Below are positions 46,149-61,624 of a stretch of DNA of 64,000 nt, in pieces; the stretch's first letter is position 1; each line of letters opens with the position of its first letter. A model generated the notes under the pieces. The model saw nothing but the letters and a program-made list of their open reading frames with translations, ran no database searches and was not told the DNA's origin. The DNA lies in IMG/VR virus record IMGVR_UViG_3300046787_000408, positions 235,984-299,983 of that record, one strand, 5' to 3'. Position numbers and translations under genes: made by a program.

Positions 46149-46153
46149 AACAT

Positions 46154-46228: not shown

Positions 46229-46235
46229 CTATAGT

Positions 46236-46272: not shown

Positions 46273-46373
46273 GACAAAAACAATGAATCTGCTTGATTTC
46301 ATTGCTATATACTATTACAATAAACACTCAGTATAAACACTGAGACTCAACATTTTAACACAAGGAAATCAAA

Positions 46374-47566: not shown

Positions 47567-47567
47567 C

Positions 47568-48478: not shown

Positions 48479-48492
48479 AATTAGTAGCTGTC

Positions 48493-50179: not shown

Positions 50180-50196
50180 GAATAATAAATACCAAC

Positions 50197-50376
50197 ATGA
50201 TTATCAACATCCATTTACAAAATACATTGTGGCAAACTCAAACCATACCAGGCCCTGGCTACAACGTCACAGAAATTCTGGACAGCATTGAAAGTGCTCG
50301 TGAGGCTGGTGAGCTGAATTGGTTGTTGTGGGATCAACCCTTACGGCTTGACATACAAGTCGTAGAGCCGCTATAA
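50197..50376 (+). CDS. Small hypothetical protein (59 aa)
   Basis: TAAATA immediately upstream of ATG. Confidence 0.45.
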   Translation: MIINIHLQNTLWQTQTIPGPGYNVTEILDSIESAREAGELNWLLWDQPLRLDIQVVEPL

Positions 50377-50383
50377 TACAAGT

Positions 50384-50878
50384 TATTGCTGTATGAAGCA
50401 AAGAGAAAAGGATTCAAGACGCGGGGGCAGTGCCCGCCAGGTCCACCATAAGGAAGTTTGATGAGTCGTAGTAGTCCATGGTTAAGTAAAGATAGTCCAA
50501 AAACTCTCAAGGAGTTTTATATTGAACTACACCCAGATTGGGTAGAGATTGATGGTCAGTACTTAACTGAGGATAGATGGAACGACATCGAACCAGAGAT
50601 ACTGGTTGCCATGAAGCGAGAATATGTTAAGTGTTCTGAACTTCTTGGTTGGCAAGTTTCTTTATGATGGGCCTGACACAGGATCGATTGGGTCAAGAGT
50701 AACAGAGTGGACAGCACGGCATGCAATCACCGACACAAGATTCTGAATCAAGGCTAGTCTTTGGTAGTAGGAACGACTTGGAAAACGAAGTAAACAAATT
50801 AAACGCAAACGACTCACAGTTCGCATTGGCCGCCTAAACGTAGCCTAGGGTAAGACATACCTCGTAACAGAAACTCAA
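50384..50878 (+). ncRNA. ssrA: Circularly permuted (two-piece) tmRNA: acceptor piece ~50384-50448, coding piece ~50669-50878, tag (A)ANDSQFALAA at 50805-50837
   Basis: CAGGTCC-A-CCA precedes GGGCCTG (7-bp acceptor with G3:U70); GAC plus T-arm; TTGGGTC/GATTCAA and ACAGCA/TGCTGT helix 2; promoter TTGACA-18-TATAAT. Confidence 0.92.
50458..50667 (+). CDS. 69-aa ORF inside the tmRNA intervening segment
   Basis: SD TAAGGA right after the CCA; stop TGA ends one base before GGGCCTG. Confidence 0.55.
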   Translation: MMSRSSPWLSKDSPKTLKEFYIELHPDWVEIDGQYLTEDRWNDIEPEILVAMKREYVKCSELLGWQVSL

Positions 50879-50899
50879 GGGCCCACTTCGGTGGGTTTC
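50879..50899 (+). terminator. Hairpin after tmRNA
   Basis: GCCCAC-TTCG-GTGGGT followed by a short T tract. Confidence 0.55.
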
Positions 50900-50916
50900 C
50901 TACTGAAAGGACTACT

Positions 50917-51537
50917 ATGAAAAAACTACTATTCATTACCGCGTTGTTGGCATCTGCAGTCAACGCACAAACTATCGATAACTGGACTGCATCTGGCGCT
51001 CCAGTAAAAAACAGCACCAACTTGTGCTGGCGCGATGCTAACTGGACTCCGGCTACTGCCCATCCTGATTGCGACGGAGCACTCAAGCCTGCACCGGTCA
51101 AGGCAGTTGCACCTGTTGCAGTACCAGTAACTGTAACTCCAGCAACACCAGCACCTAGGGCGGCTGAAGCTCCCAGGCCCTTGGTAATCAAACACTCGTA
51201 TGCCGCTGACGCATTCTTTGACTTTGATCGTGCTGTGATCCGACCAGAAGGCAAGGCCAAGTTGGACGCCTTGGTTGCACAGATCAGCAAGATCACTTTG
51301 GAAGTCGTGATTGCTGTGGGACACACTGACAGCGTTGGTACAGATGCTTACAATCAAAAGCTAGGCGATCGTAGAGCACAAGCAGTCAAGGCCTACTTGA
51401 TCAGCCGAGGTGTTGAGCGCAATCGTGTGTACACTGAAAGCCGTGGCGAGAAGCAACCTGTAGCAGACAACAAGACTTCTGTGGGCAGGGCCAAGAATCG
51501 CAGGGTGGAAATTGAAGTAATTGGTACTACCAAATAA
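50917..51537 (+). CDS. ompA: OmpA-family protein
   Basis: Signal peptide; FFDFD, GHTDSVG, YNQKLGDRRA, NRRVEI; N-terminal CWRDANWTPATA..CDG. Confidence 0.9.
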   Translation: MKKLLFITALLASAVNAQTIDNWTASGAPVKNSTNLCWRDANWTPATAHPDCDGALKPAPVKAVAPVAVPVTVTPATPAPRAAEAPRPLVIKHSYAADAFFDFDRAVIRPEGKAKLDALVAQISKITLEVVIAVGHTDSVGTDAYNQKLGDRRAQAVKAYLISRGVERNRVYTESRGEKQPVADNKTSVGRAKNRRVEIEVIGTTK

Positions 51538-51544
51538 CACTAAC

Positions 51545-51571
51545 AAAAGCGCCCAAGGGCGCTTTTGTTTT
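51545..51571 (+). terminator. Intrinsic terminator
   Basis: AAAAGCGCCC-AA-GGGCGCTTTT-GTTTT. Confidence 0.8.
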
Positions 51572-51692
51572 GGGCAAAGTCTCAAACTTTCGTGTCAAAC
51601 ATGTGCGCACACGCACATGTTTTGTTAGATAACCACTGTATAATAGCAACATAAACAATCAGTTTATAAATCATTTTTAAAAGGAAAAAATA

Positions 51693-52592
51693 ATGACTAC
51701 AACAATCACCATCAAAGACAAAGCAGTAAACACCACATACCAAAACGTTACTGGATTAACAGGCGGCGCAGGCGTTGATGCAGTATTTGATGTAACCAAA
51801 ACCAACGGAACATATTCTGTTGTGCTCGACAGCTTGGCAGCAAGTGCTGGTACAGGCTATGTGGCTGGCGACACAATCACTCTTGCTGGCACAGCCCTGG
51901 GTGGTACAGTTGCCAACAACTTGATCGTTACAGTTGCCACAGTTGGTGCCGCAGGTAAAATTGCCACATTTGGTGTGGTAGGTACAGGTCGTGTTGGCGA
52001 CGGTACAGTTGACGTTGCGGTTGATGTTACTGGTACCGAAGGCGTTGACACCTACACATTTGGGGGCTCCAGCACAGAATTCACTGTGACCAAGGCCGCA
52101 GACAAGATCACAGCAGCCAGCACCCTGGCTACCAATGTTTCATACACTCTTGAAGATCACGAGCGTGTGGTGTTCACAGACAAGGCCATTGCTTATGATG
52201 CTGACGGTCGTGCAGGTGATGTATATGCATTGTTAGCTGCCGCTTTGGGCACAGCAGATGTTACTGATGCGTATACTGGAATTGGTATCCATCTTGCTGA
52301 CGCTGGTTGGACCAACAAGCAATTGGCAGAAGCCTTGTTGGCCACAGACACTTACAAAACTGATGCTGGCGGCGTAAGCACAGAAACTTTCATCAAGCAC
52401 GTTTACAAAAACGTCACAGGTACTGACGCTACATTAGCTGATGTTACCGAACTTACCAATTGGATGAACGGTAACCAGTACAGCCAAGCTGATGTGTTGG
52501 TGATTGCTAGCGAGTTGGCCAGCTTTGAAACTGCTATTGGCTTGACTGGTCTTGCCACTACAGGCATTGACTACACGCCATTTGTTGCCTAA
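51693..52592 (+). CDS. Thr/Gly/Ala-rich protein with C-terminal DUF4214/S-layer-like domain
   Basis: LAEALL...STETFIKHVYKNVTG; SD AAGGA. Confidence 0.6.
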   Translation: MTTTITIKDKAVNTTYQNVTGLTGGAGVDAVFDVTKTNGTYSVVLDSLAASAGTGYVAGDTITLAGTALGGTVANNLIVTVATVGAAGKIATFGVVGTGRVGDGTVDVAVDVTGTEGVDTYTFGGSSTEFTVTKAADKITAASTLATNVSYTLEDHERVVFTDKAIAYDADGRAGDVYALLAAALGTADVTDAYTGIGIHLADAGWTNKQLAEALLATDTYKTDAGGVSTETFIKHVYKNVTGTDATLADVTELTNWMNGNQYSQADVLVIASELASFETAIGLTGLATTGIDYTPFVA

Positions 52593-52651
52593 ATTGACAA
52601 AAAGAGCAACAAAATATTTGACTTTTGTTGCTCTGTCATATATACTACACT

Positions 52652-52750
52652 ATGATGACAGCAATCGCAATCACGTTTAAAAACATACCTGCCAATTATG
52701 AGCAGGCCTATGAGCGCGATTGTATCTCGGGGCTTTGTCGTTGTAGTTAA
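52652..52750 (+). CDS. Leader peptide 1 (MMTAIAITFKNIPANYEQAYERDCISGLCRCS)
   Basis: ATG at the predicted +1 of TTGACT-17-TATACT (52618-52646); stop lies in the loop of the antiterminator hairpin. Confidence 0.6.
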   Translation: MMTAIAITFKNIPANYEQAYERDCISGLCRCS

Positions 52751-52800
52751 CAAAAGTACTACATTCTACAAAGACCCGCACATGATGCGGGTTTTTCTTT
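52728..52800 (+). terminator. Attenuator 1 (antiterminator/terminator)
   Basis: CGGGGCTTTGT/ACAAAGACCCG and TGTAGT/ACTACA versus ACCCGCA-CATGA-TGCGGGT-TTTTCTTT. Confidence 0.7.
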
Positions 52801-52806
52801 ATGTAC

Positions 52807-53029
52807 TAGACCAATAATTGAAAGAGTGTTACAATAGAAACAAGTTAGAGATACAGCGAAGTTTGCAAAGACCCTACAGTGATGCGGGGCTTTTGCAAAA
52901 CAAGTTGACCAGTATTGCACATCGTGTTATACTAGAGGCTAGTTAGGAAGAACAACAACTGCTCCGGAAACGGTAGCACTGCTAGAAGACACAGAAGCAG
53001 TTGACAAATATTCCCAACAGTGTTATAAT
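52807..53029 (+). promoter_or_regulatory. Three tandem sigma70-like promoters
   Basis: TAGACC-17-TACAAT, TTGACC-17-TATACT, TTGACA-17-TATAAT. Confidence 0.75.
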
Positions 53030-53380
53030 AAACACTTAGCAACAAACGATCGAGTAGTTGCGTAGAATTCCTTAAAAATTTACATGTATGATTACCCGGC
53101 AAGACAACACTTGACACGATTTTGATGTTCGGTGATAACAGTCCGTAATGCTGTGAAGCAAAACGTAGCCGGGGATCATATAAAAATGCACATTAGTTAG
53201 AAAGTCCAGCTAAGTTGAGCGTCCCCTGTAAAACGGGGAAAGAGCTAGAATTGCAGGTTAGTATTGCTTTTGTGTGTTTTTATATGATTTTTGATGCACT
53301 ACTTGCCTGAGCGAAAAACTCGTGGTAAACTACAAGAGACAGAGGGTTCGAATCCCTGGGACTGGTAGTGTGTCTTTTAT

Positions 53381-53455
53381 ACTGGGTTCGTCTATCGGTT
53401 AGGACATCAGGTTTTCAACCTGAGAAGACGGGTTCGACTCCCGTACCCAGTACCA
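53381..53455 (+). tRNA. tRNA-Glu(TTC)
   Basis: Cloverleaf; loop TTTTCAA; CCA. Confidence 0.9.
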
Positions 53456-53519
53456 AGTTTATGAGTTCGTCTAGAAACCGGTAAATTGTAGTTTAGTCTA
53501 CAAGCTCGTAATTGATCAT

Positions 53520-53594
53520 GGTGCGTTCATATAATGGTCATTATCCTGGATTGTCTATCCAGAGACGGGAGTTCGATTCTCCCACGCATCGCCA
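53520..53594 (+). tRNA. tRNA-Asp(GTC)
   Basis: Cloverleaf; loop TTGTCTA; GCCA. Confidence 0.9.
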
Positions 53595-53601
53595 AGTTAC
53601 T

Positions 53602-53690
53602 GGATCTTGTTCCCCATTGCCGGCTGTAACCCGGTAGGCATTGTCAAGTGGGGTGGTTGCCAAGTAGTTCGATTCTATCAAGATCCACCA
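53602..53690 (+). ncRNA. Non-canonical tRNA-Tyr(GTA)-like RNA
   Basis: 8-bp acceptor GGATCTTG/CAAGATCC, 4-bp T stem, ACCA; GCCGG-CTGTAAC-CCGGT arm; no normal D arm. Confidence 0.55.
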
Positions 53691-53766
53691 GTTTTATAGG
53701 AGAGTCGCTGCGAAGCGAATTCTTAAACGACCCGTAGAACTCCCGGGCGTCCTGTAGTTAGTATAT

Positions 53767-53851
53767 GGAGAATCCGCCGCAATGGTGTGGCAGGGGACTG
53801 TAAATCCTCCGACTTAGGTCATGACTGGTTCGATCCCAGTATTCTCCACCA
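53767..53851 (+). tRNA. tRNA-Tyr(GTA)
   Basis: Cloverleaf with variable arm; loop CTGTAAA. Confidence 0.9.
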
Positions 53852-53857
53852 ATTTTT

Positions 53858-53997
53858 GTGGTAAGTTTGGTTGACAGGCTATTTGACTGTATGCGTAGCA
53901 GGATTGCAAACCCGAGGGGCATATGGCGATGGGAAGTGATATCACCCGTTTGTAAAAACAGATAGCTAGGCAGGTTCGAATCCTGTTTACTACACCA
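53858..53997 (+). ncRNA. Expanded (140 nt) tRNA-like RNA with Cys(GCA)-like loop
   Basis: GTGGTAA/TTACTAC acceptor, GCAGG-TTCGAAT-CCTGT T arm, ACCA; internal TTGCAAA loop. Confidence 0.5.
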
Positions 53998-54099
53998 AGT
54001 TTATGTCTGGGTCTGACATGGTGTTTCTGATGCGATTGATCACGCAAAGGAGAATGTGGCTCGATACCACGCCCGGCGCCAAATACTAAGGCAATAACA

Positions 54100-54282
54100 A
54101 GTACTAGAGTAGATGGAAACCGACCCATGCGAGACTGCGTGGGCTTCACACTTAGAATGTGACGATGCGAAAGTAAGTCGGTCCAGTAGGGTAAGGAAAA
54201 GTGTTGCTGGCGGAAAAAGCTGCTACCAGACAGAAGTTAAGCGGGCCTAGGCTGACAGTTTAACGCCGTGTACTCTGGAACT
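54100..54282 (+). ncRNA. Orphan structured RNA
   Basis: Closing stem CTAGAGTA/TACTCTGG; internal ACCGAC/GTCGGT and CCCATGC/GCGTGGG. Confidence 0.4.
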
Positions 54283-54351
54283 AATTTATGCTCTATTAGC
54301 TCAATTGGGAGAGGAAAGTAGAGCACGGACTAAATATAGTAGAGGTCTACT

Positions 54352-54741
54352 ATGTTAAAAATTTTTAAATGTCTTTACTGTCAAAAAGAAAATCCGTGCA
54401 AAAAGAATCACATGCACAAGTACTGCAATAATATGTGTCAGAGATTGCACAGCATTACCGAAGCGATGAATGGTGATTCTCCCACTAAAGGAGTTGCACA
54501 AAACTATATGCGGAAATTTGTTGAATACAAATGTGTACATTGTGGAATAGGTTCTGAGTACAACGATAAACCTATAACATTGCAAATTGATCATATTAAT
54601 GGAGTTCGGACTGATCACAGAAAAGTAAATCTGCGATGGTTATGCCCGAATTGTCATTCCCAAACTGAGACTTGGGGATATAAGAATGTTTCAGATGAAG
54701 GTAAACGCAAAATACAACTTGCGTTAAACGGTAAGAAATAG
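54352..54741 (+). CDS. HNH endonuclease (free-standing, homing-type)
   Basis: CVHC...LQIDHING...NLRWLCPNCHSQT; AT-rich; inside the tRNA array. Confidence 0.9.
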   Translation: MLKIFKCLYCQKENPCKKNHMHKYCNNMCQRLHSITEAMNGDSPTKGVAQNYMRKFVEYKCVHCGIGSEYNDKPITLQIDHINGVRTDHRKVNLRWLCPNCHSQTETWGYKNVSDEGKRKIQLALNGKK

Positions 54742-54815
54742 GTCTCAAAGTGTTCATGGACGCACACAACACTGTCACTGTTGAAGAAGGGGATCGTTAC
54801 CCCTTGAGACCGCCA
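54741..54815 (+). tRNA. tRNA-Asp(GTC), second copy
   Basis: Loop CTGTCAC; atypical T loop ATCGTTA. Confidence 0.85.
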
Positions 54816-54822
54816 AGTTAAT

Positions 54823-54900
54823 GGGCGATGACTGTTGTAAAGGATAACAGGCGGCAGTAACTCTGCCGTGACAGTGGTTCGATTCCACTATCGTCCACCA
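54823..54900 (+). ncRNA. tRNA-like RNA with Ala-type acceptor (G3:U70, A73)
   Basis: GGGCGAT/ATCGTCC-A-CCA; T arm AGTGG-TTCGATT-CCACT; 7-bp arm with 5-nt loop instead of a normal anticodon arm. Confidence 0.6.
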
Positions 54901-54907
54901 TGAATAT

Positions 54908-55016
54908 GGGTTGTCAAGGAAGGTCACATGCACGGTGAGTAGCCGTAGGAGCATTATCGAGTGTGCGCCACCGCACTCTTGGTCAGACATGGGTTCAAGT
55001 CCCATACAATCCACCA
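54908..55016 (+). ncRNA. 109-nt tRNA-like RNA with Ala-type acceptor
   Basis: GGGTTGT/ACAATCC-A-CCA; GAC plus ATGGG-TTCAAGT-CCCAT. Confidence 0.55.
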
Positions 55017-55020
55017 AGTT

Positions 55021-55242
55021 TTGTTGTAGTGTTAGCAAGTGAAGTCACGCTAGCGAGGTTTCTTCGAAGGACCGAGTCAGTAGAAGGTTGCGGGTTCGAT
55101 GCCCGACTGGTCGCTTGAGTGGGACTGGTATACATGATGGCGTATCAACTGGATGAATCTCAAGTAACGTACCGAGTCCTAGCCCGGGCTATATGCAAAT
55201 AGGTGAATGGTGTCAATAACGATGGTGACACTACTGCAACAA
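55021..55242 (+). ncRNA. Orphan structured RNA
   Basis: Closing stem GTAGTGTTA/TGACACTAC; internal T-loop hairpin CGGG-TTCGATG-CCCG. Confidence 0.4.
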
Positions 55243-55251
55243 ATTCAACAT

Positions 55252-55326
55252 GTCGCATTAGACTTCTGGTGAGGTCATCACCCTTTCAAGGTGACCAGAC
55301 GGGATCGTAACCCGTATGCGACTCCA
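55252..55326 (+). tRNA. tRNA-Glu(TTC), second copy
   Basis: Loop CTTTCAA; T loop ATCGTAA. Confidence 0.85.
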
Positions 55327-55421
55327 TTGATAAACACACTTACAGATCCGCCCGAGTAGTAAGGGAGACAGCGACTAACCGTTGAAGGACTGTTTAAAAG
55401 TGTGTTTTTCAATGGAACAAT

Positions 55422-55513
55422 GCCCCTATAGTTTAATGGTAAAACGGCGGATTTATATCCCGTAAGCAACAGATAATTGGTTCATCTGGGTTCAATTCCC
55501 GGTGGGGGTACCA
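55422..55513 (+). tRNA. tRNA-Ile(TAT) with long variable region
   Basis: Loop TTTATAT; ~22-nt variable region; ACCA. Confidence 0.7.
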
Positions 55514-55520
55514 AAAAGTT

Positions 55521-55708
55521 AAGCTGGCCTGCCTGCGTCTAAAACTCAATGACGATGGGCCCAACTACCAGGGACTCCAGTTGATCCACTGCCTCTGGGG
55601 ATTAAGTTGCCATGACTGCTAGTCACAGTCGAACCATGTTGGTGGAAGGAAGGGAGTGCAGTGATGTATTCCGTACCTTTAAACGCAGGGTAGTAGGCGG
55701 ATCAGTTT
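55521..55708 (+). ncRNA. Orphan ~190-nt rod-like RNA (6S-like size and shape, unverified)
   Basis: CCTGCGTCTAAA/TTTAAACGCAGG closing helix. Confidence 0.35.
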
Positions 55709-55783
55709 ATCCAATTTGTGTTGACAAGCAATGTTGTTTGTCATACAATAGATACTTAGACAGTAACAAAAGTCTTTAAACAC

Positions 55784-55876
55784 ATGCACATCAAGGCGCC
55801 GTACACGCCGATGATATGTGGTATTCAGCACTGCCACTGGCAGTGTGAGGCAGGTTCGAATCCTGTATAGTGTGCA
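55784..55876 (+). ncRNA. tRNA-like RNA without CCA, with its own promoter
   Basis: TGCACAT/GTGTGCA stem; GCAGG-TTCGAAT-CCTGT; promoter TTGACA-17-TACAAT (55721-55749). Confidence 0.4.
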
Positions 55877-55939
55877 GTTGTTTACAGATTTGGTAAAATT
55901 AGTTGTTGACAAGTTCAACAATTGATGTTACAATAAGAT

Positions 55940-56828
55940 TCCGGGGCAGTTTAATGTCCTACTAGGTAGCTTGCTATCTAGTGAAGAATAAGCTGAGTGA
56001 TCAGCCCAAAGGAGGTATGCCTACATAACTCCGCCAGCAATGGTTCGTTTAGACAAGCCTGCTCAGACTCGCGAGAGTCCCTTTACTGATAAGACCGGTG
56101 GAGGTAACAATGACGCTGGATGTTGTGGAAAGAACGTTTGCTTACCGGCCCGCAAGGGTAACCGGAGCAGATGGAAAGTAACAGGTGGTGCTGACTTCAC
56201 AACTAAACCAGTCCAGTTAATTGGTATGAGAAAGGGTAGTGTATTTGTCCGAGGTGTTGCAACCAAGGGCTCGTATGCAGTTTGAGTGGTTGGTGGATTG
56301 GCAGCAATGTCAAGACGCAGATCGCAAAAGACGACTGAGTAGTTCGCAAGACGAAAGGTACGTGGTGTGTTGTATTGTGTATTCCAAAAGAGTATGCAGC
56401 AACTGAGTCAGCACATCGCAGTAGGTTGTTATAAGCTAATGGTAAGCTAACTCCCTGTTAAGGAGTCGACTGCGGGTTCAACTCCCGCTAACGATTAAAA
56501 TGCAAAGACTGACTCGGTCGTATGTGAAAAGCATCTAATACTTGAGGCGCAAGCTAATCAAGTCAGACGTAACTCGCAAGGTGAAATCTGTTTATGCTGG
56601 AAGTTTCGTAAGGTGTTAGCGCACTTGAATGGCTCGCAAGGTCAACGGGATAGATGGCGTAGAATAGCATACGGCGACAAGACTACTGCCTGTCTTTAAA
56701 AACGGCGATGCTGATAGCAGACATGGATACCTGGCAACAGGGCTGTGTGGAAGTCGAGAGAAAGCTGGCTCGCAAGGCTGGTAATAATGCTCGAGGTGCT
56801 ATTGGGAGAGATGTATTCTCAGTCCTCC
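55940..56828 (+). ncRNA. GOLLD-like large ornate RNA
   Basis: ~890 nt without a credible ORF; promoter TTGACA-17-TACAAT (55906-55934); at least six CGCAAG-capped hairpins; lies in a phage tRNA array; contains an embedded tRNA. Confidence 0.75.
56425..56495 (+). tRNA. tRNA-Asn(GTT)-like domain embedded in the large RNA (no CCA)
   Basis: GTTGTTA/TAACGAT; AGCT-AATGGTA-AGCT; ACTCC-CTGTTAA-GGAGT; GCGGG-TTCAACT-CCCGC. Confidence 0.75.
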
Positions 56829-56933
56829 ACTATTCTAAAACACATTACATGCACAATGGGTAGACATGGTAGTATTGCTTGTGATACAGCAGTATAACGC
56901 TGTGGTAGTGTATTTCAGAATGGTAAATAATTG

Positions 56934-57007
56934 CGCGGGTAGGGTGGTCACCACACCGGTCTCATAAGCCAGGTGCATCGGCAGTTCAAATCTGTCACCC
57001 GCATCCA
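56934..57007 (+). tRNA. tRNA-fMet-like (CAT), degenerate D arm
   Basis: C1:A72 mismatch; loop CTCATAA; CCA. Confidence 0.65.
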
Positions 57008-57139
57008 AATTCGTAGTTTTTCAGCATGTGGTATAAATACAACACTGAAAAACATTTAGTGGTTGACAACAATCACTAAGTAAAGTATAATTAACACTTG
57101 AACAGCAACAAAGCTGTTTGAGTAACCCAAGGAAACAAA

Positions 57140-57271
57140 ATGACTTCTATTACTTGTTCACTGTTAACCAAACAAATGCTCCAGGCGACACAAACCTGGT
57201 CGCACGCCTTTGGTCGCGTGAATAGTATTCCGGGAGTCTCAGGGTCTTGTGAAGGTGGTGGTTACGCATAA
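57140..57271 (+). CDS. Leader peptide 2 (MTSITCSLLTKQMLQATQTWSHAFGRVNSIPGVSGSCEGGGYA)
   Basis: Promoter TTGACA-17-TATAAT (57063-57091); SD AAGGA; stop in the antiterminator loop. Confidence 0.7.
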   Translation: MTSITCSLLTKQMLQATQTWSHAFGRVNSIPGVSGSCEGGGYA

Positions 57272-57329
57272 TAGCAGTAACTAACAAACTCAAAAGACCC
57301 TGGAACTAAAAACTCCAGGGTTTTTCTTT
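57240..57329 (+). terminator. Attenuator 2 (antiterminator/terminator)
   Basis: CAGGGTCTT/AAGACCCTG and GGTTAC/GTAACT versus CCCTGGA/TCCAGGG-TTTTTCTTT. Confidence 0.75.
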
Positions 57330-57511
57330 ATGTGTAATGAGTAACGAGGACTCAGCCAGCACACTAAACTAGGCAAACGGGCGGACAGGACACATGAACG
57401 TGTGGTGAGAACACACTAGTAAGACTCCTGGTCGGGGTATCAACCCCGTCATGTGGTGTAGCAATACACTGCATTCTAAAACACACTTGCTGAGTATGTT
57501 TTAGAATGTAT

Positions 57512-57586
57512 GGGCTGTTAGTGATAGTGGTAGCACAGTGGCTTTGCAAGCCTCGGGCAGGAGTTCGATTCTCCTACGGTCCACCA
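57512..57586 (+). tRNA. tRNA-Ala(TGC)
   Basis: G3:U70; loop TTTGCAA. Confidence 0.88.
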
Positions 57587-57595
57587 TATGTTAAT

Positions 57596-57670
57596 GTATC
57601 TCTGGTGTAATGGCAGCATCGCGGATTCCAAATCCGTTAGGTCAGGGTTCGAGTCCTTGGGGGTACGCCA
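57596..57670 (+). tRNA. tRNA-Trp(CCA)
   Basis: Loop TTCCAAA; G73. Confidence 0.9.
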
Positions 57671-57678
57671 ATTTTTGT

Positions 57679-57752
57679 TCGGGAATGGTGTAGAGGTAAC
57701 ACAACAGACTTTGACTCTGTCGTCCCTGGTTCGATCCCAGGTTCCCGTGCCA
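57679..57752 (+). tRNA. tRNA-Gln(TTG)
   Basis: Loop CTTTGAC. Confidence 0.9.
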
Positions 57753-57760
57753 GTTTTTGT

Positions 57761-57836
57761 GGGGGTATAGCTCATCTGGTAGAGCAGGTGCTTTGCAAGC
57801 ATCAGGTGGCAGGTTCGAGTCCTGTTGCCTCCACCA
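57761..57836 (+). tRNA. tRNA-Ala(TGC), second copy
   Basis: Canonical cloverleaf. Confidence 0.93.
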
Positions 57837-57837
57837 T

Positions 57838-57912
57838 AGCCGTGTAGCTCAGAGGAAGAGCGCTGTCTTGATAAGGCATAGGTCGACATTTCGAAATTGT
57901 CCATGGCTACCA
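57838..57912 (+). tRNA. tRNA-Ile(GAT)
   Basis: Loop TTGATAA. Confidence 0.85.
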
Positions 57913-57920
57913 ATTTTTAT

Positions 57921-57999
57921 TCCGAGAAACTCGAGCAAGGTGCATGAGCTTGACTGTTAATCAATGGTTAGGTGGGTTCGATTCCCACACTCGGAGCCA
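57921..57999 (+). tRNA. tRNA-Asn(GTT)
   Basis: Loop CTGTTAA; atypical D arm. Confidence 0.8.
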
Positions 58000-58041
58000 A
58001 TTTTTTTGTAGTAGGCGAGAGTGCCTACTAAGTAGTTTACT

Positions 58042-58131
58042 GGTGCGGTCCTATAATGGTATTAGAGCAGATTGCTAATCTGTCGCTCGGCGTAATCCGG
58101 GTTCTGAGTTCGAGTCTCAGTCGCACCGCCA
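58042..58131 (+). tRNA. tRNA-Ser(GCT)
   Basis: Loop TTGCTAA; long variable arm. Confidence 0.9.
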
Positions 58132-58139
58132 GACAACAT

Positions 58140-58215
<76 letters not shown>

Positions 58216-58222
58216 TGTTTGT

Positions 58223-58297
58223 TCCTCGATAGCTCAGTGGTAGAGTGCCGGACTGTTAATCCGTTGGTCCCTGGTTCGAGCCCAGGTCGAGGAGCCA
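58223..58297 (+). tRNA. tRNA-Asn(GTT), second copy
   Basis: Canonical cloverleaf. Confidence 0.92.
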
Positions 58298-58304
58298 TAA
58301 TTTA

Positions 58305-58379
58305 GCCCTTGTATCCTTAGTGGTAGAGGTCCTGTTTTGTAAGCAGGGTGTGGTGGTTCGATTCCATCCTGGGGCACCA
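58305..58379 (+). tRNA. tRNA-Thr(TGT)
   Basis: Loop TTTGTAA. Confidence 0.85.
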
Positions 58380-58434
58380 CAAACATAGTCAATACTCTCC
58401 CTTGACGAGCTAGGTCACTAGACTATTTTCTTTC

Positions 58435-58508
58435 GCCCTATTAGTATAATGGTATTACACCTGTTTTGTAATCAGGTTACGGCAGTTCGATTCTGTCATG
58501 GGGCACCA
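58435..58508 (+). tRNA. tRNA-Thr(TGT), second copy
   Basis: Loop TTTGTAA. Confidence 0.88.
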
Positions 58509-58559
58509 CTTTCAAGCCTATACTCAATCCTGCCGTGACGACTGTCCCTGGGCTTTTAT

Positions 58560-58636
58560 CTTTGTATGGCGCAGCCTGGTAGCGCACTAGTCTGGGGGAC
58601 TAGGGGTCGCAGGTTCGAACCCTGCTACAAAGACCA
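58560..58636 (+). tRNA. tRNA-Pro(GGG)
   Basis: Loop CTGGGGG. Confidence 0.9.
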
Positions 58637-58645
58637 ACTTTCAAT

Positions 58646-58723
58646 CTCTGTGTAATGTCAATCTGGTAGACGGCCTGATCTGGAGTCAGGAGGCTGTACG
58701 TTCGAATCGTACCATGGAGACCA
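58646..58723 (+). tRNA. tRNA-Pro(TGG), atypical C33/A37
   Basis: CCTGA-TCTGGAG-TCAGG. Confidence 0.8.
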
Positions 58724-58730
58724 ATTCAAC

Positions 58731-58806
58731 GCCGCGGTAGCTCATCAGGTAGAGCAGCAGACTGAAAATCTGTGTGTGGCTGGTTCGAGTCCAGCTCGTG
58801 GCACCA
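58731..58806 (+). tRNA. tRNA-Phe(GAA)
   Basis: Loop CTGAAAA. Confidence 0.92.
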
Positions 58807-58899
58807 TTTTATCCTTGAGTTAAGCGGGGCCGTATACACCCTTGCCAATAGAGTTAGTAATGTGTTCTGCAACAGACACCTCAGGGGCCAATTTACGAT

Positions 58900-58977
58900 G
58901 CGTCTCTAGTTCAACTGGATAGAACACCGGCCTACGAAGCCGTGAGGTTGGGGATTCGAATTCCTCGGGACGCACCA
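58900..58977 (+). tRNA. tRNA-Arg(ACG)
   Basis: Loop CTACGAA. Confidence 0.9.
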
Positions 58978-59041
58978 AAAAACAGTTGACAACATTCTGT
59001 AATTGTTGTATAATTAGAACTTAAACAAAAGAGGTAACACT

Positions 59042-59065
59042 ATGAAACGTTCAGGTAAACGATAG
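59042..59065 (+). CDS. Mini leader ORF MKRSGKR
   Basis: Promoter TTGACA-17-TATAAT (58986-59014); SD AAGAGG; stop abuts hairpin 59065-59101. Confidence 0.5.
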   Translation: MKRSGKR

Positions 59066-59127
59066 TGTCATCCTAGACCCCCGTATGGTCCTGGATGGCA
59101 CGTAAAAGACAATTCTTTACGATCCAT

Positions 59128-59204
59128 CCCTTCAAGATGTTACTGGTTAGCATACCGGACTCTTAATCCGAGAAGTCTGAGTTCGAATCTCAGTGGAGGG
59201 ACCA
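59128..59204 (+). tRNA. tRNA-Lys(CTT)
   Basis: Loop CTCTTAA. Confidence 0.82.
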
Positions 59205-59207
59205 TAT

Positions 59208-59285
59208 GGGGGTATAGTGTTAACGGTTTAGCACAGCGGACTTTTAATCCGCCAGGTCAGGGTTCGAATCCCTGTGCCCCTACCA
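59208..59285 (+). tRNA. tRNA-Lys(TTT)
   Basis: Loop CTTTTAA. Confidence 0.9.
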
Positions 59286-59411
59286 TATGCAAACACATTA
59301 ACCTGCGAAAAAGAATTCCGATGCATAATCGGCCAGTGTATAGTGTGTTTACATATGGTATTAATCTATCGACGGGTAGACACCATGCTGGGGAGTAATT
59401 AACCTCAGGAA

Positions 59412-59484
59412 CTCGCGGTCTTCTAAGTGGTAAGAAAGCCCCGTTATGGGGGTGAATGCAGGTTCGAACCCTGCCCGCAATGAG
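59412..59484 (+). pseudogene. Degenerate tRNA
   Basis: Intact D and T arms; 6-nt anticodon loop; broken acceptor stem; no CCA. Confidence 0.5.
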
Positions 59485-59503
59485 TTTGCTAGACTTCTTT
59501 GGT

Positions 59504-59578
59504 GTGGCTATGTTGTAACGGTTAGCAACAGAGATTGTGATTCTCTTAGTCTGGGTTCGATTCCCAGTAGTCACCCCA
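59504..59578 (+). tRNA. tRNA-His(GTG)
   Basis: Loop TTGTGAT; C73; no encoded G-1. Confidence 0.88.
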
Positions 59579-59588
59579 AAGAGGTTTT

Positions 59589-59663
59589 GGTTGTATGGCG
59601 TAGACGGATGCGCACGGGCTTCATAAGCCCAGGAGGTTGGATCGATACCAACTACAACCACCA
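59589..59663 (+). tRNA. tRNA-Met(CAT)
   Basis: Loop TTCATAA; T loop ATCGATA. Confidence 0.82.
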
Positions 59664-59664
59664 C

Positions 59665-59739
59665 GGGTCTTTAGTTCAACGGATAGAATGCCATGCTTCG
59701 AACTTGGCGATGTGGGTTCGATTCCTGCAGGACCCGCCA
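59665..59739 (+). tRNA. tRNA-Arg(TCG)
   Basis: Loop CTTCGAA. Confidence 0.88.
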
Positions 59740-59747
59740 AACAACAG

Positions 59748-59794
59748 TTGACAAATAAACATGCTTGCGTTATAATACAAGCTGTTCTTTAAAA
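59748..59794 (+). promoter_or_regulatory. sigma70 promoter plus boxA-like element
   Basis: TTGACA-17-TATAAT followed by TGTTCTTTAAAA. Confidence 0.7.
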
Positions 59795-59814
59795 ACTTAA
59801 TTCAAGATTAAAGT

Positions 59815-59888
59815 GCCTGGGTAGTTAAATGGTATAACAAGCGGCTGATAACCGCTAATCACAAGTTCAATTCTTGTCCTAGGTACCA
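59815..59888 (+). tRNA. tRNA-Ile(GAT), second copy
   Basis: Loop CTGATAA. Confidence 0.88.
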
Positions 59889-59889
59889 A

Positions 59890-60060
59890 TTAAAACTTTT
59901 CAATGAAATTCATGGCGTCTTCCATGCTGGTAAAATATCGCATGGTCAGGCGTTCGTTGTAAATATCATTGACAAAGATGTAACACACAGAACCTGTGTC
60001 GTTGACGCTCAAGTGTATTTGTACACTGCCGTTAGCTGCAATAAAGTTTCTTGTTCGCAT
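59890..60060 (-). CDS. Small antisense-oriented protein within the tRNA array (56 aa)
   Basis: MRTRNFIAANG...; TAAATA upstream on minus strand; fits exactly between two tRNAs. Confidence 0.55.
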   Translation of the reverse strand: MRTRNFIAANGSVQIHLSVNDTGSVCYIFVNDIYNERLTMRYFTSMEDAMNFIEKF

Positions 60061-60072
60061 CGTGTATTTAAC

Positions 60073-60146
60073 GCGGGGTTGGTATAGTGGCTGTGCTCTA
60101 GCCTTCCAAGCTAGTGAGACGAGTTCGATCCTCGTACCCCGCTCCA
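60073..60146 (+). tRNA. tRNA-Gly(TCC)
   Basis: Loop CTTCCAA. Confidence 0.9.
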
Positions 60147-60153
60147 TATTTTT

Positions 60154-60229
60154 GCCTGGTTGCGCAGAGAGGTTATGCATCTCCTTTACACGGAGAACGA
60201 TGTCAGTTCGAGTCTGACACCAGGTACCA
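60154..60229 (+). tRNA. tRNA-Val(TAC)
   Basis: Loop TTTACAC. Confidence 0.88.
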
Positions 60230-60238
60230 GTTAGTTTT

Positions 60239-60312
60239 CTCGGTATGGTGAAATGGTATCACTGAACGTTTGGGACGTTCGAGCGTAGGTTCGATTCCTG
60301 CTACCGAGACCA
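60239..60312 (+). tRNA. tRNA-Pro(TGG), second copy
   Basis: Loop TTTGGGA. Confidence 0.9.
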
Positions 60313-60457
60313 AGAGCAGCGTATGAGTTACATCATTCAGTATGAGTCACAAGGTACCGCGGTAAATCCTTGGGCAAGCAATAGTACGTACATCAATGTA
60401 ACAGGTGGTAGTGATCTACTAACGGGCCAGCCTCAAAAATTGTGTCCACCAATCTAT

Positions 60458-60535
60458 GCACAGGTGGCGGAGAGGCCCAACGCAAGGGATTGCAAATCCC
60501 TAAAACCGTGAGTTCAAATCTCACCCTGTGCTCCA
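60458..60535 (+). tRNA. tRNA-Cys(GCA)
   Basis: Loop TTGCAAA; U73. Confidence 0.9.
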
Positions 60536-60541
60536 AACAAC

Positions 60542-60633
60542 GGAAAGTAATGCAGCGGGGATGGTCCTGCGACTGGCCTTGAAAACCAGGTTCTCTTAAC
60601 AGGGATGGGGTTCGACTCCTCTGCTTTCCGCCA
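60542..60633 (+). tRNA. tRNA-Ser(TGA) with 8/4 fold
   Basis: 8-bp acceptor GGAAAGTA/TGCTTTCC; 4-bp T stem; loop CTTGAAA; long variable arm; G73. Confidence 0.8.
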
Positions 60634-60658
60634 ATAAGTAAGTGCAAAGGATTTAGTG

Positions 60659-60832
60659 ATGGAAAACAAAACACAACTATTTGAAAACAAGATCACTCTT
60701 GAGCGCTACATTTGCGACAATGTTCGCATGGTTCGCACACTTGAAGGACAAGAGTTCCTGAGTGTACGTCGAGAAGGCGAAACTCGCAAATTTTTAATTC
60801 GTCGAGACAGTTTGCGTCAAGTAAACAGTTAA
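60659..60832 (+). CDS. Small protein within the tRNA array (57 aa)
   Basis: SD AAGGA; MENKTQLFENK...; stop abuts the next tRNA. Confidence 0.6.
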   Translation: MENKTQLFENKITLERYICDNVRMVRTLEGQEFLSVRREGETRKFLIRRDSLRQVNS

Positions 60833-60907
60833 GTCTCTATAGTTCAATGGATAGAACAAGTTCCTCCTAAGAATTAGATACAGGTTCGATTCCTGTTGGA
60901 GACACCA
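60833..60907 (+). tRNA. tRNA-Arg(CCT)
   Basis: Loop CTCCTAA. Confidence 0.9.
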
Positions 60908-60914
60908 AACAAAT

Positions 60915-60999
60915 GCGTTAGTGGTGGAATGGTATACACGTTGGTCTTAGAAGCCAATGCCCTAGTGGATTGAGAGTTCGAGTCTCTCCTGACGCACCA
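60915..60999 (+). tRNA. tRNA-Leu(TAG)
   Basis: Loop CTTAGAA; variable arm. Confidence 0.9.
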
Positions 61000-61050
61000 T
61001 GAACTCGCTTTTGCTGACAGCGTATAATAGGACAAGTAGTCAGCACACTT

Positions 61051-61124
61051 AGGTCATTAGCTCAAAGGTAGAGCGCTTGGTCGACATCCAAGATACAGCG
61101 GATCGATACCGTTATGACCTACCA
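61051..61124 (+). tRNA. tRNA-Val(GAC)
   Basis: Loop TCGACAT (C33); T loop ATCGATA. Confidence 0.8.
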
Positions 61125-61131
61125 AACACAT

Positions 61132-61208
61132 GCCCCGGTGGTGGAATTGGTAGACACGCAACGTTGAGGTCGTTGTATCTGTGGGTTCGAGTCCCATCTG
61201 GGGTACCA
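61132..61208 (+). tRNA. tRNA-Leu(GAG) with short variable loop
   Basis: Leu-type D arm; loop TTGAGGT; 5-nt variable region. Confidence 0.85.
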
Positions 61209-61214
61209 AACAAC

Positions 61215-61298
61215 GCGACTGTGGTGGAATGGTATACACAGCAGACTTAAAATCTGCCGCTTAATTGATTGAGGGTTCAAGTCCCTCCAGTCGCACCA
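61215..61298 (+). tRNA. tRNA-Leu(TAA)
   Basis: Loop CTTAAAA. Confidence 0.92.
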
Positions 61299-61302
61299 TT
61301 AT

Positions 61303-61373
61303 GGGCCTACTCTGGCTGATCTTGTGAGGTCCAAACTCACAAGTCGAAGGTTCAATTCCTGAAGGGCCTGCCA
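61303..61373 (+). ncRNA. D-armless tRNA-Trp(CCA)-like RNA
   Basis: CTTGTGAG-GTCCAAA-CTCACAAG arm; AGG-TTCAATT-CCT; ends GCCA. Confidence 0.55.
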
Positions 61374-61378
61374 TTTTT

Positions 61379-61585
61379 GCAAACAATGATTCGTGCGGGG
61401 GTAATACCCCTTGGAGCTCTGTGCAGGGATGTAGCATCTCCTATGGACCAGTTGTACAGGTGAGAGGCCTGTAAACGTTCCCGGTGTCAAGAGTTATCTA
61501 TTGCAGGAGGCCGCGAAAGCCCTAGAGTGCCGACCCTGTGTCGATAGTTCACGTCCACACGCCCCGGCGAAACCGGATTGTTTGC
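61379..61585 (+). ncRNA. Orphan structured RNA at the end of the array
   Basis: GCAAACAAT/ATTGTTTGC closing stem; GGGG-GTAATA-CCCC, TACAGG/CCTGTA and CCGG/CCGG hairpins; followed by a T tract. Confidence 0.45.
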
Positions 61586-61624
61586 GTTTTTATTTTTAGA
61601 ACTCAGCGGTATATAAATATTTGA

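What the first reader, a model, noticed from the sequence alone, without database searches (positions are those of the whole stretch)
55906..56828. GOLLD-like giant RNA carrying an internal tRNA-Asn domain
Seen: ~890 nt, own promoter, dense GCAA-capped hairpins, and a full cloverleaf with GTT anticodon (56425-56495) lacking CCA inserted mid-molecule. Established: GOLLD RNAs occur in phages near tRNA genes, some contain tRNAs, and they form large multimeric structures; their function is unknown. Family assignment is by size, texture and context only.
Basis: partly seen in the sequence, partly recalled or inferred. Interest (0 to 1): 0.65.

Follow-up and report, generated by a model that had tools for sequence, protein, structure and literature searches.

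The report
Phage GOLLD RNA with tethered tRNA
This is a genuine roughly 890-base GOLLD RNA gene inside the tRNA array of a large freshwater phage; the tRNA-shaped insert is a known GOLLD feature, but here it looks like a permanently attached module, not a working tRNA gene.

Summary
The observation and the family guess both hold. Rfam's GOLLD model matches window 56362-56825 end to end (192.6 bits, cut-off 150, E 1e-52). A tRNA-Asn(GTT) cloverleaf at 56425-56496 sits in the GOLLD linker. A near-consensus sigma-70 promoter lies at 55906-55934.

The whole molecule (about 55941-56829) aligns end to end with 68 distinct relatives from IMG/VR phage contigs. Covariation supports it: 117 pairs in the 5' domain and 96 in the 3' domain, about 98% canonical.

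Contigs from freshwater metatranscriptomes of four studies lie on exactly this interval and hardly on its flanks. Some run straight across the tRNA.

Internal tRNAs in GOLLD are already published, so this is a new member of a known kind.

The internal tRNA is the only one of the window's 38 without an encoded CCA. The same holds in relatives: 0 of 45 embedded tRNAs encode CCA, against 869 of 903 free-standing ones. Its acceptor stem is usually eroded in relatives, while the anticodon loop stays CU-NNN-AA with U36.

The likeliest reading is a self-assembling RNA cage with a covalently tethered, unreleased tRNA-like module. What the cage does remains unknown.

The parts
55906..55934 (+). Sigma-70-type promoter (-35 TTGACA at 55906-55911, 17-nt spacer with TG, -10 TACAAT at 55929-55934). 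Predicted transcription start near 55941.
   Evidence: 11 of 12 matches. The same promoter sits at the same distance in the nearest relatives; 24 of 65 relatives score 10 of 12 or better. Homology to relatives begins at 55936-55944.
55941..56361 (+). GOLLD 5' domain, about 420 nt. It corresponds to the 'cap' domain, residues 1-420, of the solved env-38 GOLLD.
   Evidence: RNAalifold on 68 unique relatives: 117 pairs, 98% canonical, 74 pairs with compensatory double changes. RNA-library contigs cover it. Rfam's model does not cover this half.
56362..56421 (+). First hairpin of the Rfam GOLLD model, at the start of the 3' domain; provisionally P14 in the published numbering.
   Evidence: alignment (model positions 1-62). 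21 pairs, 99% canonical, 8 compensatory.
56425..56496 (+). tRNA-like cloverleaf with anticodon GUU (Asn) in the GOLLD linker. It has a 7-bp A/U-rich acceptor stem with two G-U pairs, U at position 73 and no encoded CCA.
   Evidence: It is the only one of the window's 38 tRNAs without NCCA. The module is present in all 68 relatives. 0 of 45 embedded tRNAs encode CCA, against 869 of 903 free-standing ones.
56497..56825 (+). Remainder of the conserved GOLLD 3' domain ('ring' domain). It includes the long-range helix 56517-56525 / 56667-56675 (drawn as a pseudoknot in Rfam) and the terminal GUAUUCUCAG loop.
   Evidence: Rfam alignment. 96 pairs, 98.4% canonical, 49 compensatory.
56826..56829 (+). 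UCCA directly after the last GOLLD helix; a possible tRNA-style NCCA 3' end.
   Evidence: Sequence. CCA is found here in 40 of 63 relatives and GCA in 17. Whether this is the mature 3' end is an inference.
56829..56925 (+). Conserved spacer hairpin (arms ACUAUUCUAAAACACAUUAC / GUAGUGUAUUUCAGAAUGGU with a variable interior), followed by tRNA-Met at 56934-57007. Probably a processing element and not part of the stable RNA.
   Evidence: Present in 61 of 63 relatives, with covarying arms. RNA-library depth falls about 500-fold here.

Best explanation
The interval encodes a full-length GOLLD RNA of about 55941-56829 on the + strand. It is carried by a large T4-like or jumbo freshwater phage and is transcribed from its own sigma-70-type promoter in the middle of the phage's 38-gene tRNA array.

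The RNA has the two-domain GOLLD layout. A structured 5' domain of about 420 nt is followed by the conserved 3' domain that Rfam models.

By homology with the solved env-38 and S. agalactiae GOLLD structures, it should self-assemble without protein. The product would be a closed dihedral cage of 12-14 copies, with 5' domains forming the caps and 3' domains the rings. The variable linker after the first 3'-domain hairpin would point into the lumen (inferred, not tested here).

In this RNA and in all 68 close relatives, that linker is a tRNA-shaped cloverleaf. The most likely reading is that this module is not a conventional tRNA gene. It stays covalently attached and gives each cage a set of tethered tRNA bodies whose anticodon loops are kept in the CU-NNN-AA form.

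Shown here: family membership, structure conservation, presence in RNA libraries, RNA-library contigs that bridge the tRNA, and the missing CCA with acceptor-stem erosion. Inferred: cage assembly, lumenal position, non-release as the main fate, and any downstream role such as binding or titrating a factor that recognises tRNA. The 3' end is probably made by processing at an NCCA-like end followed by a spacer hairpin, as at neighbouring tRNAs (inferred).
For: Family and structure:
- Rfam GOLLD 192.6 bits against a cut-off of 150, full model.
- End-to-end homology with 80 IMG/VR loci, 68 of them unique, at 69-87% identity.
- Covariation: 5' domain 117 pairs at 98% canonical with 74 compensatory; 3' domain 96 pairs at 98.4% canonical with 49 compensatory.

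Phage context:
- T4-type DNA polymerase, endonuclease VII and NAMPT.
- The window is part of a 299,983-b IMG/VR virus record.
- A cultured jumbo phage, Sinorhizobium phage Phosso, has a homologue at 186.6 bits with a tRNA-like insert at the same place.

Expression:
- In four freshwater metatranscriptomes from four studies, contigs lie on 55974-56777. Word depths there are 70-500,000, against 0-400 in the flanks.
- Contigs 56036-56531 (run X9) and 56393-56546 (run X18) run across the tRNA.

The tRNA module is atypical:
- It is the only one of 38 tRNAs in the window without NCCA. The free-standing tRNA-Asn at 58223-58297 has G73 plus CCA.
- In relatives, 0 of 45 embedded tRNAs encode CCA, against 869 of 903 free-standing ones. 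7 of 7 acceptor pairs are found in 6 of 45 embedded, against 772 of 903 free-standing.
- The D, anticodon and T arms covary and stay paired. The anticodon loop is CU-NNN-AA in 54 of 58, with U36 in 58 of 58.
- No CCA-adding enzyme domain was found in the phage record.

Literature:
- The GOLLD 14-mer cage has its linker inside, and tRNAs are sometimes in the linker (PMC12286853).
- In M. aubagnense the internal 'pseudo tRNA' was not detectable as a separate RNA on Northern blots (PMC6582537).
Against: - Cage formation was not tested for this sequence. GOLLD stoichiometry varies between members (10, 12 or 14 copies).
- The RNA evidence comes from assembled contigs, many of them from relatives at 88-99% identity. 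Contigs cannot show ends, strand or the ratio of processed to unprocessed RNA, so excision of part of the pool is not excluded.
- This particular copy has a complete 7-bp acceptor stem (with two G-U pairs) and conserved D-loop GG and T-loop. It could therefore be an RNase P / RNase Z substrate, and the host's CCA-adding enzyme could finish it.
- Among relatives, Lys-type anticodons tend to go with A at position 73 (10 of 13 ARAGORN-called Lys modules; counted by hand from the table, not phylogenetically corrected). That hints at some selection on aminoacylation identity.
- The phage record is only 81% complete, so absence of a CCA-adding enzyme is weak evidence.
Confidence: 0.85

Rival explanations
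1. The internal cloverleaf is a working tRNA-Asn gene. GOLLD would serve as its precursor or storage form. RNase P and a 3' endonuclease would release it, the host CCA-adding enzyme would complete it, and it would decode AAY codons for the phage. This matches the 'inhibited storage' idea in the review.
For: - High tRNA scores (62.4 bits) and an ARAGORN call.
- This copy has 7 of 7 acceptor pairs, D-loop GG, T-loop TTCAA and a canonical anticodon loop.
- In relatives the anticodon changes within one scaffold between Asn, Lys, Thr, Ile and Arg. Lys types tend to have A73 (counted by hand from the table).
- The idea is raised in the literature.
Against: - It is the only tRNA of 38 in the window without encoded CCA, and 0 of 45 embedded tRNAs in relatives encode it, against 96% of free-standing ones.
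- Position 73 is U, whereas the phage's own tRNA-Asn has G73. G73 as an Asn identity element rests on general knowledge, not on a test here.
- The outer acceptor pairs are lost in most relatives (7 of 7 in 8 of 58). Seven relatives have also lost the D-loop GG and the canonical T-loop yet keep the anticodon arm.
- The phage already has a canonical tRNA-Asn(GTT) at 58223-58297.
- RNA-library contigs bridge both junctions.
- In Mycobacterium the internal tRNA was not detected as a free species.
Confidence: 0.2
2. The interval holds two or three independent genes (a 5' RNA, a tRNA and a 3' GOLLD core) that are merely adjacent, not one giant RNA.
For: - Rfam's model covers only 56362-56825.
- BLAST against Phosso aligns only query positions 420-807.
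- GOLLD 5' domains are known to be variable.
Against: - The 5' part, tRNA and 3' part are collinear at fixed spacing in all 68 relatives.
- There is a single promoter upstream and none between the parts.
- A 496-nt RNA-library contig spans 56036-56531.
- The 420 + 410 nt layout equals that of the solved env-38 GOLLD.
Confidence: 0.03
3. The region is protein-coding or a chance match; it is not a structured RNA gene.
For: Short ORFs of up to 81 aa exist on both strands.
Against: - E-value of 1e-52 to a covariance model.
- More than 120 pairs with compensatory changes.
- RNA-library contigs restricted to the interval.
- No ORF of 100 aa or more.
Confidence: 0.01

Closest known systems
GOLLD RNA (Rfam RF02032); solved examples are the env-38 14-mer (PDB 9MEE) and the S. 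agalactiae 12-mer (PDB 9L0R)
   Same: - The full 3'-domain model is matched above the gathering score.
- The layout is the same: a 5' domain of about 420 nt, then the 3' domain.
- The linker follows the first 3'-domain hairpin, at about nt 482-565 here against 497-538 in env-38.
- It is phage-encoded and lies in a tRNA array, next to a tRNA-Met as env-38 does.
   Different: - The linker here is a complete tRNA-like cloverleaf, not a short disordered loop.
- The 3' end is followed by a spacer hairpin and a tRNA, with no terminator.
- The 5' domain cannot be aligned by sequence outside its own clade.
- Oligomeric state was not tested.
Mycobacterial/Mycolicibacterium GOLLD inside horizontally acquired tRNA arrays (Behra 2019, PMC6582537; Morgado 2020, cited in PMC12990946)
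   Same: - GOLLD lies in a large tRNA cluster that also holds an HNH endonuclease gene (here 54352-54741).
- A tRNA or pseudo-tRNA sits inside the GOLLD linker and was not seen there as a free RNA.
   Different: - The internal tRNA there is reported as tRNA-Phe or a pseudo-tRNA. Here and in relatives it always has U36, reading A-starting codons (Asn, Lys, Thr, Ile, Arg).
- The host and phage lineage differ: freshwater phage contigs here, actinobacterial chromosomes there.
GOLLD of Sinorhizobium phage Phosso (PV764938.1, 33,0xx-34,0xx; unannotated gap between CDS 79 and 81)
   Same: - Rfam GOLLD 186.6 bits.
- A tRNA-like insert (Rfam tRNA 54.1 bits) at the same linker position, with the loop CUUCUAA (anticodon UCU, U36-A37-A38), a short acceptor stem and no CCA.
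- The host phage is a jumbo phage.
   Different: - Only 67% identity, over the 3' half.
- It ends in an intrinsic terminator, not a spacer hairpin plus tRNA.
- It is not inside a dense tRNA array.
- ARAGORN does not call its insert.
ROOL RNA
   Same: A large phage-borne RNA near tRNA islands that forms RNA-only cages with an internal linker.
   Different: Unrelated sequence and fold. No ROOL match reached its gathering score in the window.

Membership tests
GOLLD RNA (RF02032) | Covariance-model score at or above Rfam's gathering score over the conserved 3' domain | tested here: met
   192.6 bits against 150, model positions 1-416 of 416, E 9.5e-53. Repeated on the whole virus record.
GOLLD RNA (RF02032) | Long-range helix or pseudoknot and the terminal GUAAUCUCAG-type loop of the 3' domain | tested here: met
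   Helix 56517-56525 / 56667-56675 is kept in the Rfam alignment (9 of 10 pairs) and in RNAalifold on the relatives. The terminal loop GUAUUCUCAG lies at 56811-56820.
GOLLD RNA (RF02032) | Large structured but variable 5' domain joined to the 3' domain in one RNA of more than 800 nt | tested here: met
   426 nt, 117 covariation-supported pairs. Collinear in 68 relatives. An RNA-library contig spans 56036-56531.
GOLLD RNA (RF02032) | Phage or prophage location, usually in or beside tRNA clusters | tested here: met
   IMG/VR virus record; T4-type polymerase and other phage genes; 38 tRNAs in the window; tRNAs flank the RNA in nearly all relatives.
GOLLD RNA (RF02032) | Protein-free assembly into a closed dihedral multimer (nanocage) | not testable with these tools
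   Known only for env-38 and S. agalactiae GOLLD. Needs cryo-EM or native gels of this RNA.
GOLLD RNA (RF02032) | Expression as a stable RNA, reported to rise during phage lysis | tested here: inconclusive
   Contigs in four metatranscriptomes cover the interval and not the flanks. Timing, strand and ends cannot be read from contigs.
Canonical (decoding) tRNA-Asn | Cloverleaf with anticodon GUU and conserved D-loop and T-loop elements | tested here: met
   ARAGORN; Rfam tRNA 62.4 bits; parsed arms 4/5/5 pairs, D-loop GG, T-loop TTCAA.
Canonical (decoding) tRNA-Asn | 3' end like the phage's other tRNAs: discriminator plus encoded CCA, with G73 as in the phage's own tRNA-Asn | tested here: not met
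   U73 followed by AAAA. The 37 other tRNAs in the window all encode NCCA, and tRNA-Asn at 58223-58297 ends in GCCA. 0 of 45 embedded tRNAs encode CCA, against 869 of 903 free-standing ones in relatives.
Canonical (decoding) tRNA-Asn | A 7-bp acceptor stem maintained by selection | tested here: inconclusive
   This copy has 7 of 7 pairs, two of them G-U. In relatives only 8 of 58 reach 7 of 7, and only the inner 4-5 pairs covary.
Canonical (decoding) tRNA-Asn | Release from the precursor and aminoacylation | not testable with these tools
   Contigs show that junction-spanning RNA exists but cannot quantify processing.
ROOL RNA | Match to the Rfam ROOL model | tested here: not met
   No ROOL match at the gathering threshold in the window or at E 0.1 or below in 50000-62000.

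The most novel reading that the evidence does not exclude
In this large freshwater-phage clade the GOLLD linker tRNA may have been converted from a tRNA gene into a dedicated, non-released tRNA mimic.

What supports a mimic:
- It has lost CCA and the outer acceptor pairs.
- It is held to an L-shaped body with a CU-NNN-AA, U36-A37 anticodon loop. This is the class of tRNAs that read A-starting codons: Asn, Lys, Thr, Ile and Arg.

A cage displaying 12-14 such anticodon arms could act as a multivalent decoy or sponge for a host factor that recognises these loops. Candidates are anticodon nucleases used in anti-phage defence, or a tRNA-modifying or tRNA-binding enzyme.

Separately, the GOLLD 3' end may be matured like a tRNA. 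It has an NCCA followed by the same spacer hairpin that follows neighbouring tRNAs.
Probability: 0.15. Interest if true: 0.75.

Novelty: new member of a known kind. Interest (0 to 1): 0.4.

Why it matters
GOLLD is one of the largest bacterial and phage non-coding RNAs. It has striking cage structures but no known function.

This locus does not change what GOLLD is. It belongs to a very large, easily aligned clade of more than 100 environmental phage contigs, and a related GOLLD with a tRNA-like insert at the same linker position is carried by a cultured phage (Phosso on Sinorhizobium meliloti). In the clade the internal tRNA is universal, CCA-less and decaying at its acceptor end, yet constrained at its anticodon arm.

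That turns 'what is the tRNA in the linker for?' into a testable question: released cargo or tethered mimic. The RNA is also visibly abundant in freshwater metatranscriptomes.

Tried and rejected
- A generic GOLLD 3'-end pattern (ATAATC...TAATCTCAG) scanned over IMG/VR gave 113 loci, of which only 2 were GOLLD-like. It was therefore no use for sampling distant clades. The statement about anticodon classes rests on one clade plus four outliers (L001, L315, L412, L298).
- A genome-contig scan with the clade motif gave 120 loci, nearly all chance matches. The one true GOLLD lies on a contig of a Gammaproteobacteria MAG. No host could be assigned; the permuted tmRNA hints at a proteobacterial host but was not followed.
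- The genome search 'relatives' is not available for virus records.
- A literature search linking GOLLD with anticodon nucleases, decoys or RNase P found nothing relevant. No functional GOLLD paper newer than the 2025-26 structures was found. Morgado 2020 (PMC7549688) is not held.
- A phage CCA-adding enzyme (PF01743) was not found.
- The T4 Rnl1 family search was uninformative, because nothing rang in the control genomes either.
- One RNA_ligase-family hit lies outside the window at C1:146277-146819 and was not followed.
- My first hand-set register for the pseudoknot was wrong (last table). The correct helix is the one RNAalifold and Rfam give.
- Protein-coding and chance explanations were rejected.

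Full report
**Observation**

- A sigma-70-type promoter, TTGACA-17-TACAAT with a TG extension, lies at 55906-55934.
- A non-coding stretch follows, with no ORF longer than 81 aa.
- GCAA-capped hairpins occur at about twelve times the density of the rest of the window. There are 5 with at least 3 closing pairs; 500 shuffles gave a mean of 0.17 and a maximum of 2.
- A cloverleaf with anticodon GTT is called by ARAGORN at 56424-56497 and by Rfam's tRNA model at 56425-56496 with 62.4 bits. It is followed by U and AAAA, not by CCA.

**Identity**

Rfam's GOLLD model (RF02032) matches 56362-56825 over its full length: 192.6 bits, gathering score 150, E 9.5e-53. The same result came from the whole virus record. 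No ROOL match reached threshold. That model covers only the conserved 3' half.

Three results show that the 5' 420 nt belong to the same molecule.
- nhmmer with 55935-56830 finds 104 matches among IMG/VR loci fetched with two short clade motifs. 80 of them run end to end, 68 are unique, and they are 840-909 nt long at 69-87% identity.
- RNAalifold on these gives 117 pairs in 55936-56361. They are 98% canonical, and 74 pairs show compensatory changes in at least two sequences. The first 3'-domain hairpin adds 21 pairs, and the rest of the 3' domain adds 96 pairs at 98.4% canonical with 49 compensatory.
- A 496-nt contig from an RNA library spans 56036-56531.

The layout is a 5' domain of about 420 nt, a hairpin, a linker and then the 3' domain. 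It mirrors the solved env-38 GOLLD, which has a 5' region at 1-420, a 3' region at 421-833 and a disordered linker at 497-538 facing the cage lumen.

**Context**

The window is the last 64 kb of a 299,983-b IMG/VR virus record estimated to be 81% complete. It encodes a T4-type DNA polymerase, an exonuclease, endonuclease VII, NAMPT and other auxiliary genes.

All 38 tRNA genes are on the + strand. Runs that hold the sequence are mostly freshwater or other aquatic metagenomes.

In relatives the RNA is always inside tRNA arrays, with up to 27 tRNAs within 3 kb. The only isolate phage with a match is the 469-kb Sinorhizobium phage Phosso. An unannotated gap there holds a GOLLD (186.6 bits) with a tRNA-like insert at the same place and a terminator after it.

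**Expression**

Logan contigs of four freshwater metatranscriptomes from four studies were laid on 54500-58500. They lie on 55974-56777, where summed word depths are 68-120, 141,000-505,000, 345-1,718 and 74-298 in the four runs. The bins on either side show 0-1,084.

The silent flanks argue against DNA carry-over. Contigs 56036-56531 (X9) and 56393-56546 (X18) cross the whole tRNA.

Joints at 56427->56496, and loose ends that begin a different D-arm at 56427, come from relatives that carry a different tRNA between identical flanks.

Contigs cannot give ends, strand or processing ratios. This therefore shows that junction-spanning RNA exists, not how much of it there is.

**The internal tRNA**

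Internal tRNAs in the GOLLD linker are already published. They are mentioned by Kretsch et al. 2025, by a 2026 review citing tRNA-Phe in Mycolicibacterium, and by Behra et al. 2019. The last group found an internal 'pseudo tRNA' that was undetectable as a free RNA on Northern blots, in a tRNA cluster that also holds an HNH gene. An HNH ORF is present here too, at 54352-54741.

The comparison made here adds the following.
- The other 37 tRNAs of the window all encode NCCA. 35 of them have 7 of 7 acceptor pairs and 3 have 6 of 7. The embedded one alone lacks CCA, has two G-U pairs and has U73. The phage's free-standing tRNA-Asn(GTT) at 58223-58297 ends in GCCA.
- Across the relatives' loci, 869 of 903 unique free-standing tRNAs encode CCA and 772 have 7 of 7 acceptor pairs. 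Among the embedded ones, 0 of 45 encode CCA and 6 of 45 have 7 of 7 pairs.
- All 68 relatives have the module. Of these, 58 parse as full cloverleaves with D, anticodon and T stems kept by abundant covariation. Only the inner four or five acceptor pairs are maintained.
- Anticodons among the 58 are GTT 37, TTT 12, CTT 4, TCT 2, TGT 1, GAT 1 and ATT 1. All have U36, and the loop is CU-NNN-AA in 54 of 58. Near-identical scaffolds differ only in the anticodon.
- More distant GOLLDs carry Arg-UCU (Phosso and L315) or Ile-UAU (L412). L298 has no tRNA.
- A subclade of seven has lost the D-loop GG and the canonical T-loop but keeps the anticodon arm.
- No CCA-adding-enzyme domain was found in the phage record.

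**Interpretation**

The RNA is a GOLLD and, by homology, most likely forms an RNA-only cage with its linker inside. That step is inferred.

The linker tRNA looks like a module under selection for its body and anticodon arm but not for a chargeable 3' end. I therefore favour a covalently tethered tRNA mimic over a released tRNA.

Evidence on the other side:
- This copy has an intact 7-bp stem.
- The elbow elements are conserved.
- There is a trend for Lys-type anticodons to go with A73 (10 of 13 ARAGORN-called Lys modules; counted by hand from the table and not corrected for phylogeny).
- Contig data cannot exclude partial excision.

What the tethered tRNA arms would do is speculation. Possibilities are a decoy for anticodon-loop-recognising host factors, or capture of a tRNA-binding protein. 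I found no literature on this.

**3' end**

There is no terminator. The last GOLLD helix is followed by UCCA (56826-56829) and then a roughly 95-nt hairpin (56829-56925). The arms of this hairpin covary in relatives, and it is present in 61 of 63. CCA is found at that spot in 40 of 63 relatives and GCA in 17. The next tRNA starts about 93 nt after the conserved block in many relatives, and 104 nt after it here.

Hairpins of the same family follow the CCA ends of ordinary tRNAs or lie in spacers at 53167-53296, 55322-55417, 57472-57508 and 59280-59361. RNA-library depth drops about 500-fold over the hairpin. I read it as a processing or spacer element of the array. This suggests that the GOLLD 3' end is made the way a tRNA's is, but that is an inference.

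**Verdict**

Both the observation and the interpretation are confirmed. This is a new member of a known family carrying a known kind of insert. The comparative data give a modestly new and testable angle on the role of the internal tRNA.

Noticed in passing
window 50344-50879 (+): The phage appears to carry a two-piece (circularly permuted) tmRNA. Rfam tmRNA_permuted scores 97.4 bits (cut-off 47) at 50387-50837, and alpha_tmRNA scores 55.9 bits (cut-off 50). ARAGORN did not call it. The tag peptide was not worked out.
   Followed up: no
window 53167-53296, 55322-55417, 56829-56925, 57472-57508, 59280-59361: A family of spacer hairpins in the tRNA array, with arms like (C)CAT-NNN-AAACACA / TGTGTTT-NNN-ATGG. 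They often start at or include the CCA of the preceding tRNA. The copy after GOLLD is conserved, with covariation, in 61 of 63 relatives. A similar hairpin also follows a tRNA in L298. Their function is unknown; they may be processing sites.
   Followed up: partly
window 46074-61298: All 37 free-standing tRNA genes encode the 3' CCA. No CCA-adding-enzyme domain (PF01743) was found in the 300-kb virus record.
   Followed up: yes
window 55721-55900 (+): A second near-consensus promoter (TTGACA-17-TACAAT, 55721-55749) precedes a roughly 145-nt unit. The unit folds into a four-way junction with a T-arm-like CAGGUUCGAAUCCUG (-45 kcal/mol, z -2.7). Neither ARAGORN nor Rfam calls it a tRNA.
   Followed up: partly
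window 54950-55140 (+): Two tRNA-like fragments that no tool calls. One ends ...GGGTTCAAGTCCCATACAATCCACCA near 55016 and the other contains GCGGGTTCGATGCCCGAC near 55090. RNA-library contigs give high depth at 55036-55303 in runs X17 and X18.
   Followed up: no
window 57063-57330 (+): A perfect 12-of-12 promoter (57063-57091) leads a roughly 250-nt non-tRNA unit. RNA-library contigs cover it (57091-57288 and 57120-57326). It may hold a very small ORF or another small RNA.
   Followed up: no
window 54352-54741 (+): An HNH endonuclease ORF (129 aa) lies inside the tRNA array. The same association of tRNA cluster, GOLLD and HNH is described for mycobacteria (PMC6582537).
   Followed up: partly
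window 55422-55513 and 60542-60629 (+): tRNA-Ile(TAT) is unusually long at 92 nt. A sub-threshold tRNA-Sec-like match (36.1 bits, cut-off 47) lies at 60542-60629. Further tRNA matches seen only by Rfam lie at 59208-59282 (61.8 bits), 58647-58719 (31.5 bits) and, below the tRNA cut-off, 57921-57996 (25.7 bits).
   Followed up: no
L001 (Sinorhizobium phage Phosso, PV764938.1) 7605-8545: The deposited annotation leaves a 1-kb gap between CDS 79 and CDS 81. The gap holds a GOLLD RNA (Rfam 186.6 bits), an internal tRNA-like element (54.1 bits, anticodon UCU) and a terminator. None of these is annotated.
   Followed up: yes
window 40675-42072, 46374-48478, 61625-63109: Auxiliary metabolic genes lie around the array: NAMPT, AhpC/TSA peroxiredoxin, class II aldolase, a CMD-family protein and a radical SAM protein. 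An OmpA-domain protein lies at 50917-51537.
   Followed up: no
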